IMG/VR virus record: IMGVR_UViG_3300025364_000003
Location: 1-64,000 of that record
Strand: one strand, 5' to 3'
DNA length: 64,000 nucleotides
Shown here piece after piece: positions 21,866-28,716 of the stretch; position 1 is the first letter of the stretch, and each line of letters opens with the position of its first letter. A program made the position numbers and the translations under genes. A model generated the notes under the pieces. It searched no databases. It was not told the origin of the DNA and was given only the letters and a program-made list of their open reading frames with translations.

Positions 21866-22071
21866 TTATTCGAAGACTCCGTTTGTTCTGATAAGTAGAG
21901 GTTGTGCCAAGTTTCAAGTATAACGCAACCTATGTATGAAGAATGGATAAATAATCTAGCACGCCAAAATGAATAAAAACATTATTGATAAACTTGTTTG
22001 TTTTCCCGTCGGAATAGGGTTTATGACGCAAATCAACCTATGTAGTCTGTCTCAGACGAAGGAGTTGCCAC

Positions 22072-22503
22072 GTGAAAGATATCGAAGAGCACCTACACCA
22101 ATATTTGTTACAGGCTGGACAAACAGTTTATTTGCAAAACACTAAAATACATGGGCGCCGAAATAAAAAAGTAAGTGTTGTTTCTTATTCCCAAGAAGGC
22201 GTTGTTGATTTCTTTATAAAATGTCATGCGAAGCTCGTTACCAATGATGATTTTAGTCATTTGGTTGAAAAATATGGCGTTGATGGCAAGCTGGGAAATG
22301 AAATTATGATAACCAATGGTCAAATGGCTATTGTGCTTGCTTCTTTCCACTGGGGCCATACTGAAAAAGAGATCAAAGCTCTCCTGGAGAAGAACGTCAT
22401 TAAAAAGCCCGAAGAAGCAACACCATCAGTAACTTGTTTCTTGCTTGTTGATGATCAATTTGTAATCGCTAGTCATGATAAGTGTAATCCTGTAGACTTA
22501 TGA
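22072..22503 (+). CDS. hypothetical protein
   Basis: ORF with AAGGAG SD. Confidence 0.65.
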   Translation: MKDIEEHLHQYLLQAGQTVYLQNTKIHGRRNKKVSVVSYSQEGVVDFFIKCHAKLVTNDDFSHLVEKYGVDGKLGNEIMITNGQMAIVLASFHWGHTEKEIKALLEKNVIKKPEEATPSVTCFLLVDDQFVIASHDKCNPVDL

Positions 22504-23405
22504 GTTCAAAGTTTTTTACACAAGGGCAAGCCATTACCTTTATCGAAAAAGTTTTCGACAAGGGGCGGTTGTCTAATGGTGGAAAAAACATCTCAGTTGT
22601 TTGCCCTATGTGCAAATCTGTTAAGAATGACAGATATGAAAAACAAAAACTGGTGATAAGAACTGACAACTTTAATACTAAAAATAATAAAATTTATATT
22701 GGTCGAGCTGTATGCCTTCGACGAAGATATTTGAGGCATTTGTCTAATTTATTCGCTAAAAAATATCGTAATAAATATCTTGAAAGAGAATATTGGAAAT
22801 ACGGAGAGGATGTTTTTGAATTTGCTTTACTAAAACATGTGCCCAAAGATAAATTGGTTATTGTCGAACAACAGTATCTTAATAAATTGAAACCATTGAA
22901 TGGCAAAAAGACGTACAATCTAACATTGCATGCAGAAGGACCGGGCAATTGTTTAACAGAGTATAGTAAAATGAAAATAAGTCAAACCTTGACTGGGAGG
23001 AGACATTCTAAAAACCGCATAGAGAAGATTAAGAAATCTTGTGCCTGGCGGAAAAAACAAATAAAATTAATGTCACCCAATGGGAAGCTGGTAAAAATAA
23101 ATGGCATCGTCGATTTTTGCAAAGAATATAATCTTGCCAGAAGCGGCATTGCTAAAGTAATCAACGGCAAGAGATTACATTATAAACGTTGGTGTTTGTC
23201 AAAAAATTATGATATCGTCCTAAAAAACCAAGGTAACGTTGGTAAAAATAAACTAAAAAGAGTGTTACTCTCTCCTCAGGGTGTTTCTTATGAAGAAATA
23301 CGAAATATTAGAGACTTTTCAAAGCAAAAAAAATTATCATACTCAAGATTTTGTATGTTGTTACGTGAAGAAATAACCGAATATAAAGGCTGGAGATATA
23401 GATGA
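22500..23405 (+). CDS. chimeric ORF: primase N-terminal fragment fused to GIY-YIG homing endonuclease
   Basis: first ~58 aa align by eye to the N-terminus of 23402-24418; then NNKIYIG..LRRRY..H..EQQYL..YN and repeated SPNG/SPQG..KGW DNA-binding repeats. Confidence 0.75.
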   Translation: MSSKFFTQGQAITFIEKVFDKGRLSNGGKNISVVCPMCKSVKNDRYEKQKLVIRTDNFNTKNNKIYIGRAVCLRRRYLRHLSNLFAKKYRNKYLEREYWKYGEDVFEFALLKHVPKDKLVIVEQQYLNKLKPLNGKKTYNLTLHAEGPGNCLTEYSKMKISQTLTGRRHSKNRIEKIKKSCAWRKKQIKLMSPNGKLVKINGIVDFCKEYNLARSGIAKVINGKRLHYKRWCLSKNYDIVLKNQGNVGKNKLKRVLLSPQGVSYEEIRNIRDFSKQKKLSYSRFCMLLREEITEYKGWRYR

Positions 23406-24418
23406 GTCATTATACTGAAGGACAATTTATATCTTTTATTCAAAGGTCTTTTGGGGATGGTAAATTAGATGGTCGTAAAAACAATATACAGTTAGTTTGT
23501 CCTTTCTGTAGAAATGCAAAAGGTGGTAGTTATTCAAAAAGAAAATTAGCTATAAAAACTACCAAGCCACATTTTGTTCATTGCTGGGTCTGTGGATACA
23601 AAAATAGGAACATCTACAAATTGTTAGCAAGGTGGGCTCCTGAACATTTGTCAGAATATAAAGATTCGTTCCTCGATGCTGAGGAGCTGAAAGCGAGCGA
23701 AGCTGAGGTCACACAAACATATAAGCCAATAGTCCTTCCAAAAGGGTTTACCTTGTTGGCCGACGCTTCAGCTCGTTTGACTTCTTTCGATACCTATCAG
23801 AGAAGATATTTTGAAAAGGCTATTGAATATCTCAACAGTCGTGGAATTAAAACTCAGGCCGAACTTTGGTATTGGAAAATTGGCATAACAACATTTTATA
23901 AAGAAGGCTGCAAGGATAGAATTATTATTCCATCTTTTGATTGTGATGGTACACTATCTTATTGGACGGGCAGAAGCTGGCGCCGAAACCCTAACAAGAA
24001 ATACAATAACCCATACTGCAACCGAAAAAACGTCATATTCAATGAACTGAATATTGATTGGAAAGAAGCACTCACAATTGTCGAAGGACCATTTGATCTT
24101 TTGAAGTGTAATGCAAATGCAACTTGCGTTTTAGGATCAGAACTAACGCTCGAATATGAACTTCTTCAAAAGATTATCAAAAATCGTACGCCGGTTATTT
24201 TAGCTTTTGATCCCGACAAAGAAGGTCAGAGTAAACAACTTGAATTAGCCAATCGATTTCTAGAATTTGATATACCAGTGAAAATTGTTGAACATAGGGA
24301 TAAAACCAAAGATGTCGGTGATCTATCGAAATCAGAGTTTATCGATCTATTAAATTCTGCTAAGACATATTCGACAAACTATCATCTTAGACTGAAAATT
24401 GCATCGATAATGCAATGA
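23402..24418 (+). CDS. DnaG-like DNA primase
   Basis: CPFC...HCWVCG zinc finger, YLNSRGI, RIIIP, TOPRIM IVEGPFD, AFDPD, KDVGD. Confidence 0.9.
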   Translation: MSHYTEGQFISFIQRSFGDGKLDGRKNNIQLVCPFCRNAKGGSYSKRKLAIKTTKPHFVHCWVCGYKNRNIYKLLARWAPEHLSEYKDSFLDAEELKASEAEVTQTYKPIVLPKGFTLLADASARLTSFDTYQRRYFEKAIEYLNSRGIKTQAELWYWKIGITTFYKEGCKDRIIIPSFDCDGTLSYWTGRSWRRNPNKKYNNPYCNRKNVIFNELNIDWKEALTIVEGPFDLLKCNANATCVLGSELTLEYELLQKIIKNRTPVILAFDPDKEGQSKQLELANRFLEFDIPVKIVEHRDKTKDVGDLSKSEFIDLLNSAKTYSTNYHLRLKIASIMQ

Positions 24419-24450
24419 CGTTTATTTGAGAAAGATTTACGGAACATATT

Positions 24451-27400
24451 ATGCGCATAATTCATATCTCGGACATACATTGGCGAGGTATTCAAAGGCA
24501 TAGGGAATATAATAAAGCTTTTGAAGAACTTTACAGGCAATTGAGAGAACTCAATGTTGATCTAATCGTTAACACTGGAGATACTTTTCATACCAAAACT
24601 CAGGGCATCACTCCTGAAATTATTGAACGACTTGCTTGGATGTTTCGCTCTCTTGCGGACATTGCTCCGACATATACCCTTCTTGGCAACCATGATGGCA
24701 ACCTTACTAATTTGCATCGTAAGGACATTATTACCCCGATTCATGAATCGATTGATCATCCCAAAGCACATCTGCTTCGTAAGTCGGGCGTTTACAAAGT
24801 CGATGATCTTAAAGATCAAGATGTTTATATCGGAGCTTTTTCACCCTTTGACCAAAAAGGTTGGCCAAGTGTAAAGCCAGTAGAGGGAGCAATCAACATA
24901 GCTCTTTATCACGGTTCTGTTGCGGGCTCGGTAATGGACAATAATTGGACATTGCCTTGGGAAAACTGCGAAGCTGAGGTTTCGGACTTTACTAAGTTTG
25001 ATTTTGCGCTTCTGGGCGACATTCACAAACAGCAGTATTTGGCAAAACGCAAAGATAAGAATGGTGTTGAAAAGCCATGGATGGGCTATCCTGGCTCTCT
25101 TATCCAACAAAACTTTGGTGAAACTGAGACTAAAGGTTATCTTGTTTGGGACATCCGCACACGAGACGATTGGGATGTTTCTTTTAAGAAATTGGAGAAT
25201 TATAGCCCGTTTGTTACCATACATTGGGAAGGAACCGTAGACGAAACAATCAAGAAGGTTGTTGAAAGCAGGGGTGAAAAAGCTTTTTTGCCAGGCGCTC
25301 GTTTTAGAGTTTCTTCTTCATTTGCTATCCCTTCTATCGAAGCTAGAAAGTTAGTACATGATCTAAGAGAAGTTAGAAAAGCAAGCGAAGTAACTTTCAA
25401 ATATGACATCATTTCAAAGATGGATCATGTTGAATCCAACTCGCTGAAGATCTCCAAAAAGGGATTGAGGCAAGACCCAGATGCAGTAGTTCGTCTTTAT
25501 CTTGACTATATCAGAGCACATGCTCAAAACTATCATTTTGATATTGACCAACTAGATGAGGCTGAAAATTTGATTAGAGGCTACATGTCCAAGCTAATGG
25601 TCAGAGAGGCTGACAGTCTTACGAAGAATTGCAATTGGTCAATCAAGTCACTTGAGTTTGATAATATTTTCAGGTATGGGGAAGGAAATAGGATTAACTT
25701 CAACGATCTTGAAGGCGTGGTTGGAGTATTCGGTCCTAATCGAATCGGAAAAGCACTAGACATTAATACGCCCATACCAACAATAAATGGATGGAAAACA
25801 ATTGAGTCGATCACTACGAACGATTTTGTGTTTGATTCTAATGGTAGGCCATGTCGTGTTACTGCAAAAAGTCCAATTTATACAGAGCATAAATGCTATG
25901 AACTTGTATTTTCAGATGGAACTAAGGTGGTGGCTGATGCAGATCATCAATGGATCGTTAATGATCACAAGGCAATGGCCAAACAGAGAAAACTTACAAA
26001 ATCACATAAAAAAGTTGTTACCACCAAACAAATGTTTGAGTCTCAAACCTTTTCTGTGGGTAAAAACAAAGTAAACCATTGGTCAATTACAAATTGTTCA
26101 CCAGTACAATACCCAAAACGATTTTTACCCCTTGATCCATACGTGTTAGGTTGCTGGCTTGGTGATGGCCATTCGCACAGTTCAGAAATTACTTGTTTCG
26201 ATGAAGAAATTCTTGAAAACATAAAAAAATCTGGTGAAACGATCCTTGAGAAGAAACGACCAGGTTCATTTACGGTAAAGTTGTTGTCACCCCGCCTCCG
26301 TAGTCTAGGTGTGCTTGGAAACAAGCATATTCCCAGTATGTATATGATTGCTTCTGTACCTGAAAGAATTTCCTTATTGCAAGGTCTTATGGACACAGAT
26401 GGCAGTTGTTCCAAGTCAGGGTTGGTGGAATTTTGCCAATGTGACGAAAAACTTGCTCATCAGGTAAAAGAACTAGCATGCAGTCTAGGATTTAAAACAA
26501 CCATCAGAGTTGAAGACGCTAAGCTTTATGGCAAAACAATCAGCAAAAGATATAGAGTTTCCTTTACGCCACATAAAAATGATATTTGTCCTTTCAGACT
26601 TTCAAGAAAAGCAAACAGAATTAGGGCAGTAAAAAATGCTTTTGCAGACAGAACAAAGCGACGTTATGTTGTTGACATTAAACCGGTTCCTTCGATTCCA
26701 GTCCAATGTTTGGTGGTAGATAGCCCAGACCACTCTTTTTTGTTTGGTCGAAATTATGTTCCAACTCACAATTCTTCGATAGTGGGCGCCATTATGTACG
26801 CACTTTACAATACGACTGATCGTGGCCCAATGAAAACTGCCCACATAATCAACAAAAACAAAAACTACTGCAAAGCAAAGGTACGAATTAGTGTTGGTGG
26901 CACTGATTATATAATTGAACGTCAAAGTCAAAGAGTCATTCCCAAGAGGAATAAGAGAAAATATGACCCTGACAAAACAACCACTACTTTGAATTTCTGT
27001 CGGATTGAATGGGATGAAGAGCATGGTGTTGAGAAGAAAATTTCTGAGAACTCTATCAGTAGAGACGATACCGACAAGCAAATCAGAAACCTTATTGGCA
27101 CATCGAATGATTTTTTGCTGACGGCTCTTTCTTCGCAAGGCTCAGTTGACAAGTTTATCAAAGAGGGGCCGACAGACAGAAAAAAGATTCTAGCAAGATT
27201 CCTCGAACTTGACATTTTTGAAAAACTTTATTCGCTTTGCAAAGATGATTACAATAGCCTAAATTCAAAGGGCAGTTATCTATCGCCTGAATCTATCGTG
27301 AATCAAATCAAAAAGGCTCGTAAAAGAGCTAGCGACCTTGAGAAGAGTATTGAGGTTCTCACAGAGAGAATTTTCAAGCATCGAGAACAAAAGGATGAGA

Positions 27401-28716
27401 TCAAGCTTTGGCTAATGCATCATGAGAAGAGTGCAGCCGAAGTTGATTTGGCACAAATAGATGCACTTGAAAAGAAAATCAAGGAACTTGAAGATAAGTA
27501 CATGGCCAAGTCAACTGAACTGGAAAAAACGAGAAAAACAGTTCGAGACACAGGCAAAGCTTTGAAAACAACAACTTCTGCCAAGCGTAAGTACAACATT
27601 GATGTTCTGAACGCTGAACTCGAAAGCTTTGAAGCTTTAAAAGCAACCATGCATGAGTTAAAGCATGAGTTGAATTCGCAGAAAGCAATTTTGGAAAACC
27701 AGAAAAAGAATGTAAAAAAATTAAACGTTGTACCTTGTGGCGATCAATTTCCAGATTGTCATTATATTCGTGATGGTCACCGAGATAAGAAAAAGGTTGC
27801 CAAACAAGCAGAAACCGTAAACAAGCTTTCAGAACAGTATTCTAATGCTGAAGCTACCTTTGAGGAGTACATCGCCAAAAGGATCAAGGAAAGCATTGAG
27901 GAGTACAGAAAGCTCGATCGGGAGGAATTTGAACTTTCTTCTAAGTTAGAGTCTGCCCGAAATAACCGAAATCACATACGCTCTCAAATTACCAGTATCA
28001 AAGCTGAAATCAAGAAAACCAAGAAAGAGCTTGTCAGGCTCCAAAAGACGGTTGATATTCTTGAAGGTAAAGAATTTGAACGAAAGAAAGAATCGCTCGA
28101 CAGAATAAGAGATACTATTCATTCCTTAGAGTCTAAGAAAACCGACATTATTAGAGAGCTTGGCGGCCAACAAGAATCATTGAAGCGGCTTCTTTTAGAA
28201 GAAGAGGAAACCAAATCTCTTATCAAAAAGCTTAAGATTTACGATTCTATTGTAGCGGCTTTTTCGAAGACAGGAATTCCTGCAATGGTTTTGAAGTCGC
28301 AACTTCCCGCTATCAATCAAGAGTTGAATAAAATTCTTGAAGGAATTGTTGAATTCAAAATATCACTGGAAACTGATGTTAAATCAAATGTAATGGACGT
28401 CTATATTGAAGACGGACATAGTTCAAGAATTATTGAATTGGCTTCTGGAATGGAAAAAACTTTGGCAAGCCTTGCACTGAGAGTTGCCCTGAGTAATCTT
28501 TCCTCACTTCCAAAATCCGACATCCTCATCATTGATGAAGGTTTTGGCGCTTTAGACGAAGAAAATATTCAAAGTTCCATGGAAATGCTTACGTTTCTTA
28601 GGGGATACTTTAAAACAATTTTGGTGATTTCTCATGTTACCCAAATTAAAGAAGTGGCTGATAGAATAATTGAAGTTAAGAATGATGGTACCGAATCTAA
28701 AGTTACAACATTCTAA
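24451..28716 (+). CDS. fused Mre11/SbcD nuclease - Rad50/SbcC ATPase, intein-containing
   Basis: SDIH, GDTFH, GNHD, LGDIH, YPGS metallophosphoesterase motifs; Walker A GPNRIGK/SS split by intein; coiled coil; LASGMEK signature, IIDEGFGALD, VISH. Confidence 0.92.
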   Translation: MRIIHISDIHWRGIQRHREYNKAFEELYRQLRELNVDLIVNTGDTFHTKTQGITPEIIERLAWMFRSLADIAPTYTLLGNHDGNLTNLHRKDIITPIHESIDHPKAHLLRKSGVYKVDDLKDQDVYIGAFSPFDQKGWPSVKPVEGAINIALYHGSVAGSVMDNNWTLPWENCEAEVSDFTKFDFALLGDIHKQQYLAKRKDKNGVEKPWMGYPGSLIQQNFGETETKGYLVWDIRTRDDWDVSFKKLENYSPFVTIHWEGTVDETIKKVVESRGEKAFLPGARFRVSSSFAIPSIEARKLVHDLREVRKASEVTFKYDIISKMDHVESNSLKISKKGLRQDPDAVVRLYLDYIRAHAQNYHFDIDQLDEAENLIRGYMSKLMVREADSLTKNCNWSIKSLEFDNIFRYGEGNRINFNDLEGVVGVFGPNRIGKALDINTPIPTINGWKTIESITTNDFVFDSNGRPCRVTAKSPIYTEHKCYELVFSDGTKVVADADHQWIVNDHKAMAKQRKLTKSHKKVVTTKQMFESQTFSVGKNKVNHWSITNCSPVQYPKRFLPLDPYVLGCWLGDGHSHSSEITCFDEEILENIKKSGETILEKKRPGSFTVKLLSPRLRSLGVLGNKHIPSMYMIASVPERISLLQGLMDTDGSCSKSGLVEFCQCDEKLAHQVKELACSLGFKTTIRVEDAKLYGKTISKRYRVSFTPHKNDICPFRLSRKANRIRAVKNAFADRTKRRYVVDIKPVPSIPVQCLVVDSPDHSFLFGRNYVPTHNSSIVGAIMYALYNTTDRGPMKTAHIINKNKNYCKAKVRISVGGTDYIIERQSQRVIPKRNKRKYDPDKTTTTLNFCRIEWDEEHGVEKKISENSISRDDTDKQIRNLIGTSNDFLLTALSSQGSVDKFIKEGPTDRKKILARFLELDIFEKLYSLCKDDYNSLNSKGSYLSPESIVNQIKKARKRASDLEKSIEVLTERIFKHREQKDEIKLWLMHHEKSAAEVDLAQIDALEKKIKELEDKYMAKSTELEKTRKTVRDTGKALKTTTSAKRKYNIDVLNAELESFEALKATMHELKHELNSQKAILENQKKNVKKLNVVPCGDQFPDCHYIRDGHRDKKKVAKQAETVNKLSEQYSNAEATFEEYIAKRIKESIEEYRKLDREEFELSSKLESARNNRNHIRSQITSIKAEIKKTKKELVRLQKTVDILEGKEFERKKESLDRIRDTIHSLESKKTDIIRELGGQQESLKRLLLEEEETKSLIKKLKIYDSIVAAFSKTGIPAMVLKSQLPAINQELNKILEGIVEFKISLETDVKSNVMDVYIEDGHSSRIIELASGMEKTLASLALRVALSNLSSLPKSDILIIDEGFGALDEENIQSSMEMLTFLRGYFKTILVISHVTQIKEVADRIIEVKNDGTESKVTTF
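25753..26772 (+). mobile_element. class 3 intein with LAGLIDADG homing endonuclease (340 aa)
   Basis: begins Ala (ALDINTPIPT), block B ADADHQW, LGCWLGDG and LQGLMDTDG, block F VQCLVV, ends PTHN followed by Ser. Confidence 0.9.

What the first reader, a model, noticed from the sequence alone, without database searches (positions are those of the whole stretch)
22500..23600. Homing endonuclease that hijacked the primase 5' end and supplies a replacement 5' end
Seen: ORF 22500 starts MSSKFFTQGQAITFIEKVFDKGRLSNGGKNISVVCPMC...KQKLVIRTDNF, homologous to the primase start MSHYTEGQFISFIQRSFGDGKLDGRKNNIQLVCPFC...KRKLAIKTTKPHF, breaks between the two halves of the zinc finger and continues in frame into a GIY-YIG domain that lacks its own GIY strand. 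The first ~60 codons of the intact primase look AT-rich like the endonuclease. Inference: a non-splicing element inserted inside an essential gene, is expressed from the old primase start, and rebuilds the gene with a diverged (cleavage-resistant) 5' end.
Basis: partly seen in the sequence, partly recalled or inferred. Interest (0 to 1): 0.65.

Follow-up and report, generated by a model that had tools for sequence, protein, structure and literature searches.

The report
Endonuclease cassette that replaces primase start
A selfish nuclease gene sits inside the primase gene of a giant phage and, instead of splicing out, carries a foreign copy of the gene's first 62 codons so the primase stays whole; in this phage a small deletion has since fused the nuclease to the leftover old start and removed one of its catalytic strands.

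Summary
ORF 22500-23405 consists of 58 codons of a primase 5' end, then an I-TevI-like GIY-YIG endonuclease that lacks its first 25 codons. A complete DnaG-type primase follows at 23402-24418 with an ATGA overlap.

Relatives settle the origin:
- Cassette-free alleles carry one primase whose 5' end matches the window's leftover fragment (88%), not the working 5' end (43%).
- Trees reject an in-place duplication (AU p = 8e-6).
- The working 5' end has GC3 0.175, against 0.324 for the rest of the gene.
- Two other phage lineages carry the undeleted cassette at the same point (after ...HCW). It reads: resident fragment, stop, an endonuclease with its own start and GIY strand, then a full primase with a foreign 5' end. 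Each has a matching empty allele.

The window's in-frame fusion is therefore a secondary 95-nt deletion. It removed the GIY strand and its tyrosine, so this copy is probably no longer an active nuclease.

No intron was found. No RNA data exist, and cleavage is untested.

The same layout recurs at three other genes: an SbcD-like gene in two relatives, the portal gene elsewhere in this genome, and a helicase gene in an unrelated viral contig. It mirrors the fungal mitochondrial 'mobile ORF' elements, which replace gene 3' ends. I found no phage description.

The parts
22072..22503 (+). Upstream gene (143 aa, no family match). Its stop overlaps the start of the fused ORF (ATGA at 22500-22503). 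Homologues precede the primase in every relative examined.
22500..22673 (+). Resident ('type I') primase 5' remnant, codons 1-58. It keeps the first zinc knuckle (CPMC) and lacks the second (HCWVC).
   Evidence: 88% identical to the 5' end of the empty allele P0005 and sister to it in the N-part tree. GC3 0.397.
22672..22675 (+). Deletion scar between 22673 and 22674. 95 nt present in L008 (positions 507-601) are missing here: the last five fragment codons (WVHCW), the short junction with its stop codon, and endonuclease codons 1-25, which include the GIY strand.
   Evidence: DNA alignment of the window with L008; codon view
22674..22922 (+). Truncated GIY-YIG catalytic domain (residues 59-141). 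The YIG Tyr66, Arg76, His80, Glu123 and Asn140 equivalents are present. The GIY tyrosine (I-TevI Y6, P0122 Y22) is absent.
22923..23405 (+). Endonuclease C-terminal region, presumed DNA-binding (weak NUMOD-like match). It ends in a TGA that overlaps the primase ATG. Its last 43 codons are under purifying selection against L007 (dN 0.019, dS 0.78).
23392..23395 (+). GGAG, 6 nt upstream of the primase ATG and inside the endonuclease's last codons. A possible ribosome-binding site for the rebuilt primase.
   Evidence: sequence printed; inference
23402..23587 (+). Foreign ('type II') primase 5' end, codons 1-62 up to ...HCW. It travels with the endonuclease.
   Evidence: 43% identical to P0005 but 94%, 84% and 73% to the 5' ends of P0003, L008 and P0006. 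Forms a separate clade. GC3 0.175. Nucleotide identity to the empty allele L010 is 45-67% here and 72-83% from codon 62 on.
23588..24418 (+). Resident body of the DnaG-type primase (codons 63-338 and stop), with the Toprim domain.

Best explanation
The region holds a free-standing, I-TevI-like GIY-YIG homing-endonuclease cassette lodged inside the 5' part of the phage's DnaG-type primase gene.

Structure. The cassette is the endonuclease gene plus a foreign copy of primase codons 1-62, including the start codon. It sits after the ...HCW codon, inside the second zinc knuckle. The resident 5' end is left upstream as a dead remnant. The primase is translated intact from the imported start, which overlaps the endonuclease stop. 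No RNA or protein splicing is needed.

Spread (inferred). In a mixed infection the endonuclease would cut cassette-free 'type I' primase alleles near this site. Repair from a cassette-bearing genome would copy the cassette in, using the resident 5' end as left homology and codons 63 onward as right homology. The imported 5' end differs most, including one extra codon, in the 10-27 nt just upstream of the insertion point. That difference would make it immune to cutting.

State in this phage. A 95-nt deletion has fused the remnant in frame to endonuclease codon 26. The enzyme's own start and its GIY strand, with the first catalytic tyrosine, are gone. This copy is therefore most likely past its active homing phase: either nuclease-dead, or retained for its DNA-binding part.

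Shown: the architecture, the foreign origin of the working 5' end, presence/absence polymorphism in three lineages, and the deletion.
Inferred: cleavage, immunity, the homing route, translational coupling, and loss of activity.
For: Architecture and homology.

Intact cassettes at the same codon, each with its own empty allele:
- L008 has a fragment ending ...HCW, a stop, a 268-aa endonuclease with its own GIY, then the primase. Its empty allele is P0004: the fragment is 97% identical to P0004's 5' end, the primase body is 97% identical, and the working 5' end only 51%.
- L009's fragment is 59/59 identical to P0044, and the rest of its primase is nearly identical to P0044.
- For the window, L010/P0005 is the syntenic empty allele.

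Phylogeny:
- In the tree of the primase body the type II sequences are not a clade (AU p = 2.7e-7), and L008 is sister to the type I allele P0004.
- In the 5'-end tree the fragments sit with their own lineage and the type II ends form a separate clade.
- A sister relation between fragment and working 5' end is rejected (p = 8e-6 for the window, 1.7e-7 for L008).

Composition and breakpoint:
- GC3 of the imported end is 0.175 in the window and 0.206 in L008, like the endonuclease and unlike the gene body.
- The nucleotide-identity breakpoint lies at about codon 62.

Deletion.

Catalytic domain: E = 1.3e-11 to I-TevI for P0122.

No intron.

Same layout at other genes.

Target conservation: 102 of 120 primase homologues keep the canonical spacing at the site and 18 carry lengthened variants.
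Against: - No enzyme activity, cleavage site or homing event has been observed.
- No RNA data exist for this phage.
- Synonymous sites between lineages are saturated, so insertions cannot be dated. Gain and precise loss cannot be told apart; in L008 the cassette is flanked by an 11/12-nt repeat that could allow precise loss.
- Type II-like 5' ends also occur in phages with no endonuclease. The imported end could therefore be an ordinary allele of a donor lineage rather than something evolved for resistance.
- The endonuclease ORF in the window is still open over 243 codons, and its C-terminus is under purifying selection against L007. That fits a protein still in use and weakens 'simple decay'.
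- The structure model is only moderate (pLDDT 69.5), so it cannot settle whether the truncated domain folds.
Confidence: 0.8

Rival explanations
1. The fused protein is still an active homing endonuclease. The primase-derived strand (KLVIRT...) stands in for the missing GIY strand, and the enzyme is deliberately driven from the primase's own start.
For: - The fusion is in frame, and the ORF is intact over 301 codons.
- The YIG, Arg, His, Glu and Asn equivalents are all kept.
- The C-terminus is under purifying selection.
- In-frame fusion of an endonuclease to the target's first codons recurs at L002 and at L096 (G000 112164), and apparently at the end of L008, where the fused ORF is cut by the contig end and its nuclease identity is untested.
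Against: - The residue in the place of the GIY tyrosine is not a tyrosine. From my own knowledge, that tyrosine is catalytically important in characterised GIY-YIG enzymes.
- The model leaves residues 49-60 below pLDDT 50 and forms no first strand.
- The intact relatives show that the fusion is a deletion derivative.
- The L096 fusion keeps its own GIY strand, so it is not a precedent for doing without one.
Confidence: 0.12
2. The fusion is a domesticated, nuclease-dead DNA-binding protein. It could shield the homing-site region from related endonucleases of co-infecting phages, or repress the operon as I-TevI represses its own promoter. On this view it is kept by selection, not decaying.
For: - The ORF is open, with dN 0.019 against dS 0.78 over the last 43 codons compared with L007.
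- The identical protein occurs on 13 contigs.
- The same sequence is found in four runs.
Against: - The selection signal may date from before the deletion, or come from the L007 lineage. Whether L007 carries the fusion is unknown, because its contig starts inside the endonuclease.
- Part of the constraint may come from the overlapping primase ribosome-binding site.
- No functional evidence exists.
Confidence: 0.2
3. A local tandem duplication of the primase 5' end within this phage lineage was followed by insertion of an endonuclease between the copies and by divergence in place. No foreign 5' end is involved.
For: The two 5' ends are homologous and adjacent.
Against: - AU tests reject fragment and working 5' end as sisters (p = 8e-6 and 1.7e-7).
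- The fragment is 88-97% identical to empty alleles of its own lineage, while the working end is 43-51% identical.
- The working end has a very different GC3.
- Near-identical type II ends sit in lineages whose gene bodies are not each other's closest relatives.
Confidence: 0.03
4. It is an intron or an intein. The 22500 piece would be an upstream exon or extein, joined to the primase by RNA or protein splicing.
For: Endonuclease genes in phage replication genes are often carried in introns or inteins. An intein lies in the next gene.
Against: - No Rfam family, and so no group I or II intron, matches 21900-24700 even at E up to 1.
- The downstream gene has its own start and a complete zinc ribbon, so splicing would duplicate residues 1-58.
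- There is a stop codon before the primase, and no Hint domain in P0001.
- Intact cassettes have a stop right after the fragment.
Confidence: 0.02

Closest known systems
I-TevI (GIY-YIG endonuclease of the phage T4 td intron)
   Same: The catalytic domain of the intact relative P0122 aligns with I-TevI residues 2-78 at E = 1.3e-11, including the SGIYQI...NNK.Y.G motif. Both have a two-part layout of an N-terminal nuclease and a C-terminal DNA-binding region. The window copy keeps the equivalents of Y17, R27, H31, E75 and N90.
   Different: It is not inside an intron. The window copy lacks residues equivalent to I-TevI 1-9, including Y6.
Free-standing Seg endonucleases of T-even phages (SegF, SegG): intronless homing, marker exclusion and co-conversion (review PMC2988022)
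   Same: Both are free-standing GIY-YIG genes next to essential genes. Both spread by a double-strand break with co-conversion of flanking sequence that is itself resistant to cutting.
   Different: Seg genes lie between genes. Here the element lies inside the coding sequence, leaves a remnant of the resident 5' end, and carries its own replacement start. The review lists intragenic insertions only as gene splitting.
Mobile ORF elements (mORFs) of fungal mitochondria: Allomyces atp6; Glomus atp6, atp9, cox2, nad3 (PMC3630166)
   Same: The logic is the same. An endonuclease ORF travels with a foreign copy of a gene end. The native end is left as a duplicate that groups with close relatives, while the inserted end groups elsewhere. 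The ORF is often in phase with the host gene.
   Different: - Those elements replace the 3' end; this one replaces the 5' end, including the start codon.
- They occur in organelles rather than phages.
- Most carry LAGLIDADG enzymes.
- Here the endonuclease stop overlaps the restored gene's start.
N-terminal duplication by intron mobility in Tremella fuciformis mitochondria (as summarised in PMC8393795)
   Same: Partial replacement of a gene's 5' part by foreign sequence, leaving an N-terminal duplicate.
   Different: As summarised there, it is driven by a mobile intron. No intron is present here. I did not read the primary paper.
mobE in nrdA of Aeromonas phage Aeh1; mobA in the T4 topoisomerase gene (PMC2988022)
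   Same: A free-standing endonuclease gene inserted inside an essential phage gene without splicing.
   Different: Those insertions split the gene into two polypeptides that reassemble. Here the gene is kept whole by a duplicated, foreign 5' end.

Membership tests
GIY-YIG homing endonuclease (I-TevI-like) | Pfam PF01541 match above the gathering score | tested here: met
   28 bits against a cut-off of 22.6, residues 59-135. phrog_314 homing endonuclease at E = 2.4e-21.
GIY-YIG homing endonuclease (I-TevI-like) | First strand with the GIY motif and its tyrosine | tested here: not met
   The Pfam match starts at profile position 9. Alignment with P0122, P0123, 22 further relatives and I-TevI shows the strand is absent and replaced by primase-derived ...RTDNF. 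It is present in the cassette copies of L008 and L009.
GIY-YIG homing endonuclease (I-TevI-like) | YIG tyrosine and the conserved Arg, His, Glu and Asn of the active site | tested here: met
   Y66, R76, H80, E123 and N140, by alignment
GIY-YIG homing endonuclease (I-TevI-like) | Separate C-terminal DNA-binding module | tested here: inconclusive
   The NUMOD-like PF22083 match scores 16.8 bits, below its cut-off of 27. PHROG endonuclease families cover residues 176-299. The model shows folded elements at residues 154-221.
GIY-YIG homing endonuclease (I-TevI-like) | Presence/absence polymorphism at one site among close relatives | tested here: met
   Three lineage pairs: window with P0005/L010, L008 with P0004, and L009 with P0044
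GIY-YIG homing endonuclease (I-TevI-like) | Site-specific cleavage of the cassette-free allele, and homing | not testable with these tools
   Needs the enzyme and substrates
Group I/II intron carrying an endonuclease gene | Ribozyme structure flanking the ORF | tested here: not met
   An Rfam scan of 21900-24700 at E up to 1 gave only one chance-level lncRNA match
Group I/II intron carrying an endonuclease gene | The host gene is complete only after splicing | tested here: not met
   The downstream ORF is a full-length primase with its own start and both zinc knuckles, colinear with uninterrupted homologues
Intein | In-frame Hint domain with no stop before the C-extein | tested here: not met
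   No Hint or intein family in P0001. A TGA at 23403-23405 ends the ORF.
Gene-end replacement element (fungal mitochondrial mORF type) | Endonuclease ORF linked to a foreign copy of a gene end, with the native end kept as a duplicate | tested here: met
Gene-end replacement element (fungal mitochondrial mORF type) | Replaces the 3' (carboxy-terminal) end of an organelle gene | tested here: not met
   Here the 5' end of a phage gene is replaced, so this is a mirror-image analogue and not a member
DnaG-type primase (ORF 23402-24418) | N-terminal zinc ribbon and a Toprim domain | tested here: met
   CxxC at residues 33-36 and 61-64. Toprim_4 at 27.6 bits against 25. phrog_47 DNA primase at E = 5.7e-39.

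The most novel reading that the evidence does not exclude
Endonuclease-plus-replacement-5'-end cassettes may be a distinct and so far undescribed way for homing endonucleases to live inside essential phage genes, alongside introns, inteins and gene splitting. On this reading they home as a unit between diverged giant phages. Their tight link to the resident start would be a selected way of being expressed rather than an accident. In all seven cassettes seen here the nuclease, or the ORF taken for it, is either fused in frame to the target's first codons or starts 1-2 nt after the remnant's stop. Under this reading the window's fused protein may also be a retained, nuclease-dead DNA-binding factor.
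Probability: 0.35. Interest if true: 0.75.

Novelty: new variant of a known kind. Interest (0 to 1): 0.62.

Why it matters
It shows how a selfish nuclease gene can occupy the inside of an essential replication gene with no splicing machinery at all. It brings the piece of the gene that it displaces, start codon included.

Consequences if true:
- It explains mosaic 5' ends in this primase family. The first 62 codons have a different history from the rest.
- It explains a length-variable hot spot just upstream of the insertion point.
- It warns annotators that short 'hypothetical' ORFs upstream of endonuclease genes can be displaced gene starts.
- The pairs of filled and empty alleles define a likely homing site to within a few codons. 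That makes cleavage and immunity directly testable.

The same layout at the SbcD-like, portal and helicase genes suggests the mechanism is general in these phages.

Tried and rejected
- DNA search of 21900-24500 against GenBank phages found no match. The protein search gave only distant primases at 23-27% identity.
- IMG/VR and JGI metagenome scans with the endonuclease alignment found no closer relative of this enzyme than the window's own contig. The informative relatives came from the protein-cluster search and contig look-ups instead.
- DNA for the P0004 contig could not be fetched, so the L008 empty-site junction is defined at protein level only.
- Of 80 I-TevI-like loci with a downstream ORF, scanned for a duplicated 5' end, only L024/L025 showed it besides the window. 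The layout is therefore uncommon among such endonucleases in general.
- dN/dS: synonymous sites between lineages are saturated. Insertions could not be dated, and gain could not be told from loss.
- The AlphaFold2 model of P0001 tested whether the primase strand completes the nuclease sheet. The junction (residues 49-60) is below pLDDT 50, which gives no support either way. The input alignment could also have biased it.
- The promoter and terminator scan was at chance level.
- Sequencing runs: only DNA contigs from hypersaline-lake metagenomes, identical to the window, with no variants and no RNA. The stretch laid was 2,701 letters.
- I looked for I-TevI's CNNNG cleavage motif upstream of the insertion site by eye. 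It was not conserved between type I alleles, so I dropped it.
- Literature searches found no description of this layout in phages. Subscription journals are not covered.
- No alternative genetic code was used.
Full report
**What is in the window**

On the + strand three ORFs are chained by overlapping stop and start codons.
- A 143-aa gene of unknown function lies at 22072-22503.
- ORF A lies at 22500-23405 (301 aa, P0001).
- ORF B lies at 23402-24418 (338 aa, P0002).

ORF B is a DnaG-type primase. It has a zinc ribbon, Toprim domains above Pfam thresholds, and a phrog_47 DNA primase match at E = 5.7e-39.

ORF A is a chimera.
- Residues 1-58 resemble the start of ORF B. BLASTP gives E = 1e-12, and a search of the window's own genome gives E = 1.1e-10.
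- The first zinc knuckle (CPMC, residues 35-38) is kept. The primase-like part stops at ...RTDNF, before the second knuckle.
- Residues 59-135 match the GIY-YIG domain from profile position 9 of 78.
- The remainder matches phage homing-endonuclease families.

The window belongs to a giant phage. Identical contigs of about 461 kb exist. The source is a hypersaline-lake metagenome.

**Which 5' end is the resident one**

A protein search found 515 primase relatives. Their N-termini fall into a majority 'type I' form and a minority 'type II' form.
- Type I reads ...SNGGKNISVVCP.C...KLVIRTDNF..HCWVC.
- Type II has a different sequence and one extra codon just before HCW.

ORF A's fragment is type I. 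ORF B's working start is type II.

Splitting each protein at HCW gives the following identities.

| Comparison | Identity |
|---|---|
| Window primase body vs P0005 (type I, no endonuclease) | 81% |
| Window fragment vs P0005 5' end | 88% |
| Window working 5' end vs P0005 5' end | 43% |
| Window working 5' end vs 5' ends of P0003 / L008 / P0006 | 94% / 84% / 73% |

Trees agree with these figures.
- In the tree of the primase body, the type II sequences are interleaved with type I sequences, and holding them together is rejected (AU p = 2.7e-7).
- In the 5'-end tree, the fragment is sister to P0005 (97/86) inside a starred clade of its own lineage, and the type II ends form a separate clade.
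- Making the fragment and the working 5' end sisters is rejected, at p = 8e-6 for the window and 1.7e-7 for L008.

Nucleotide identity between the window and the syntenic empty allele L010 is 45-67% over codons 1-60. It jumps to 72-83% from codon 62 on. The fragment is therefore the resident 5' end, and the working 5' end is imported.

**The undeleted cassette in relatives**

Two other lineages carry the element in a fuller form.

L008 reads as follows.
- A type I fragment of 63 codons ends exactly at ...HCW.
- Six unrelated codons and a stop follow.
- Two nucleotides later a conserved Met opens a 268-aa endonuclease (P0122). It has its own SGIYQI...NNKIYIG motif, is 71% identical to the window's endonuclease part, and matches the I-TevI catalytic domain at E = 1.3e-11.
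- A type II primase then starts in an ATGA overlap.

The empty allele of L008 exists as P0004. The fragment is 97% identical to P0004's 5' end, the primase body is 97% identical, and the working 5' end only 51%.

L009 comes from a more distant phage with a different upstream gene, and it has the same layout.
- Its fragment is 59/59 identical to the start of P0044.
- The rest of its primase is nearly identical to P0044, while its working 5' end is very different.

L007 (primase 85% identical to the window's) has the endonuclease C-terminus directly upstream with the same ATGA overlap. Its contig begins there, so the rest cannot be seen.

Three lineages thus each show a filled and an empty allele with the insertion at the same codon.

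**The window's fusion is a secondary deletion**

Aligning the window with L008 shows that 95 nt (L008 507-601) are missing between window positions 22673 and 22674. The missing piece comprises:
- the last five fragment codons;
- the junction with its stop codon;
- endonuclease codons 1-25.

The two reading frames differ by two nucleotides, so a 95-nt loss joins them in frame.

The loss includes the first strand of the GIY-YIG fold and its tyrosine (P0122 Y22, I-TevI Y6). The equivalents of Y17, R27, H31, E75 and N90 remain, as Y66, R76, H80, E123 and N140. From my own knowledge, the first tyrosine is important for catalysis in characterised GIY-YIG nucleases, so I infer that this copy is crippled.

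An AlphaFold2 model was built with an alignment of relatives (mean pLDDT 69.5). It gives a confident core for residues 61-140 but leaves the junction (residues 49-60) below pLDDT 50, with no first strand formed. This gives no support for the primase strand standing in for the missing one, but the model is too weak to exclude it.

Against simple decay:
- The ORF is still open over 243 endonuclease codons.
- Its last 43 codons differ from L007 by 12 synonymous and 2 non-synonymous changes (dN 0.019, dS 0.78).

Either the deletion is recent, or the protein is still used, for example for DNA binding.

**How it most likely works**

Shown:
- The cassette is the endonuclease gene plus primase codons 1-62.
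- It lies after ...HCW, within the second zinc knuckle.
- The primase is complete from the imported start.
- The imported end has the endonuclease's low GC3, 0.175 in the window and 0.206 in L008, unlike the remnant and the gene body.

Inferred by analogy with intronless homing of T-even Seg endonucleases and with I-TevI (review PMC2988022):
- The enzyme cuts type I alleles near the site during mixed infection.
- Repair copies the cassette, using the resident 5' end and codons 63 onward as homology.
- The imported end is immune to cutting.

Type I and type II differ most, including the extra codon, in the 10-27 nt upstream of the insertion point. That is where an I-TevI-like enzyme would be expected to cut.

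Across 120 homologues, 102 keep the canonical spacing there, mostly as RTDNF. Eighteen carry lengthened variants, which looks like target-site escape. L002 is a hybrid: it is type I up to ...KLVIKT and then type II-like, as a short co-conversion tract would give.

Type II-like ends also occur in phages without any endonuclease. These are either donor lineages or lineages that lost the gene.

In L008 the cassette is flanked by an 11/12-nt repeat covering the VHCW codons, which would allow precise loss. Synonymous sites are saturated between lineages. I therefore cannot date the insertions or separate gain from loss. Still, the endonucleases of the window and L008 are far more diverged than L008 is from its empty allele P0004, which argues for separate acquisitions.

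**Expression**

No RNA runs hold this sequence, and consensus promoter scans are at chance. What the sequence shows is tight coupling.
- The remnant starts in an ATGA overlap with the upstream gene.
- In L008, L009 and L024 the remnant's stop lies 1-2 nt before the endonuclease ATG.
- In the window the two are fused.
- The restored gene's start always lies inside or against the end of the endonuclease gene. In the window a GGAG lies 6 nt upstream of that start.

**Rivals**

- In-place duplication is rejected by the AU tests and by composition.
- An intron or intein is very unlikely. No Rfam family matches at E up to 1. P0001 has no Hint domain. A stop codon precedes the primase, and the downstream gene is complete.
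- Assembly error is excluded by identical contigs in four runs and by the same protein on 13 contigs.
- Two readings remain open. The fused protein may be a still-active enzyme (about 0.12). It may instead be a retained nuclease-dead DNA-binding protein (about 0.2).

**Generality**

The same layout appears at other genes.
- In L002 an HNH/NUMOD3 endonuclease ORF begins with the first 13 codons of the SbcD-like gene (35/40 nt identical) and ends in an ATGA overlap with the complete gene.
- At the end of L008 the first 10 SbcD codons run in frame into a zinc-finger ORF that I take, untested, for another endonuclease start; the contig ends there.
- Elsewhere in this phage's genome (G000 112164-112985, outside the window) a GIY-YIG/NUMOD3 endonuclease with an intact GIY strand begins with the same 11 amino acids as the downstream T4-like portal gene. 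All 12 nucleotide differences between the two copies are synonymous.
- In an unrelated IMG/VR contig (L024) a 44-aa fragment of a DEAD/ResIII helicase, broken inside the Walker A motif, precedes a GIY-YIG endonuclease and the full helicase.

Among 80 other I-TevI-like loci with a downstream ORF, no further case was found.

**Comparison with what is known**

The enzyme belongs to the I-TevI/Seg kind of GIY-YIG homing endonuclease. The window copy fails one defining feature, the GIY strand.

The element's logic is that of the fungal mitochondrial 'mobile ORF' elements. These carry a foreign carboxy-terminal gene end and leave the native end as a duplicate (Allomyces atp6; Glomus atp6, atp9, cox2, nad3; PMC3630166). 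An N-terminal duplication linked to intron mobility is reported for Tremella mitochondria (summarised in PMC8393795).

For phages, the T4-family review lists intragenic free-standing endonucleases only as gene-splitting insertions (PMC2988022). My searches found no description of a 5'-end replacement cassette. The library lacks most subscription journals, so absence is not proof.

**Verdict**

I rate this a new variant of a known kind, with interest 0.62. It is a clean, well-supported natural example with testable homing-site predictions, but the principle is known from organelles.

Noticed in passing
window 25753-26772 (within ORF 24451-28716, +): A 340-aa intein with a LAGLIDADG/Hom_end domain interrupts the P-loop (GPNRIGK|S) of the fused SbcD-SbcC-like protein. 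It starts with Ala and ends in HN followed by Ser. It is absent from the homologues in L010 and L002.
   Followed up: partly
L002 5098-5787 (relative IMGVR_UViG_3300035698_024300); the same in L003: An HNH/NUMOD3 endonuclease ORF begins with the first 13 codons of the SbcD-like gene (35/40 nt identical; the motif-I Asp is changed to Gly). It ends in an ATGA overlap with the complete gene. The window has no insertion at this site (its start is at 24451).
   Followed up: partly
L008 2417-2557: The first 10 codons of the SbcD-like gene (MRIAHISDIH) continue in frame into a Cys-x2-Cys zinc-finger ORF that I take for another endonuclease start (not tested against any family). The contig ends there.
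   Followed up: no
L096 665-1486 = G000:C1:112164-112985 (same phage genome, outside the window): A GIY-YIG/NUMOD3 endonuclease with an intact GIY strand starts with MARNESFFQRL, identical to the first 11 residues of the downstream T4-like portal gene. All 12 nucleotide differences between the two copies are synonymous. The portal gene itself carries an HNH intein.
   Followed up: partly
L024 2329-4391 (IMGVR_UViG_3300025372_000010; also L025, L106): Same cassette layout in an unrelated viral contig. A 44-aa fragment of a DEAD/ResIII helicase, broken within Walker A, ends in a stop. One nucleotide later a 268-aa GIY-YIG endonuclease starts, followed by the full helicase with a 14-nt overlap.
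   Followed up: partly
L097 829-1029 = G000:C1:132328-132528 (outside the window): A 66-aa ORF resembles the first ~50 residues of the 903-aa fibre-like gene that starts 8 nt later (44% identity, E = 6e-10). No endonuclease lies between them. It may be a relic of a lost cassette, or a small paralogue.
   Followed up: no
window 24451-28716 compared with L094 3555-6032 and L092: SbcD-like and SbcC-like parts are one fused ORF in the window and in L010 (1081 aa without the intein). In more distant relatives they are two genes of about 228-232 aa and 883-897 aa. One of those relatives has a free-standing NUMOD3 endonuclease gene directly upstream of sbcD.
   Followed up: no
G000:C1 around 125080-125391 and 193156-193671 (outside the window): Two further GIY-YIG endonuclease-like genes lie in the 206-kb record (tblastn E = 1e-12 to 3e-20). 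The genome therefore carries at least four such genes and at least two inteins.
   Followed up: no
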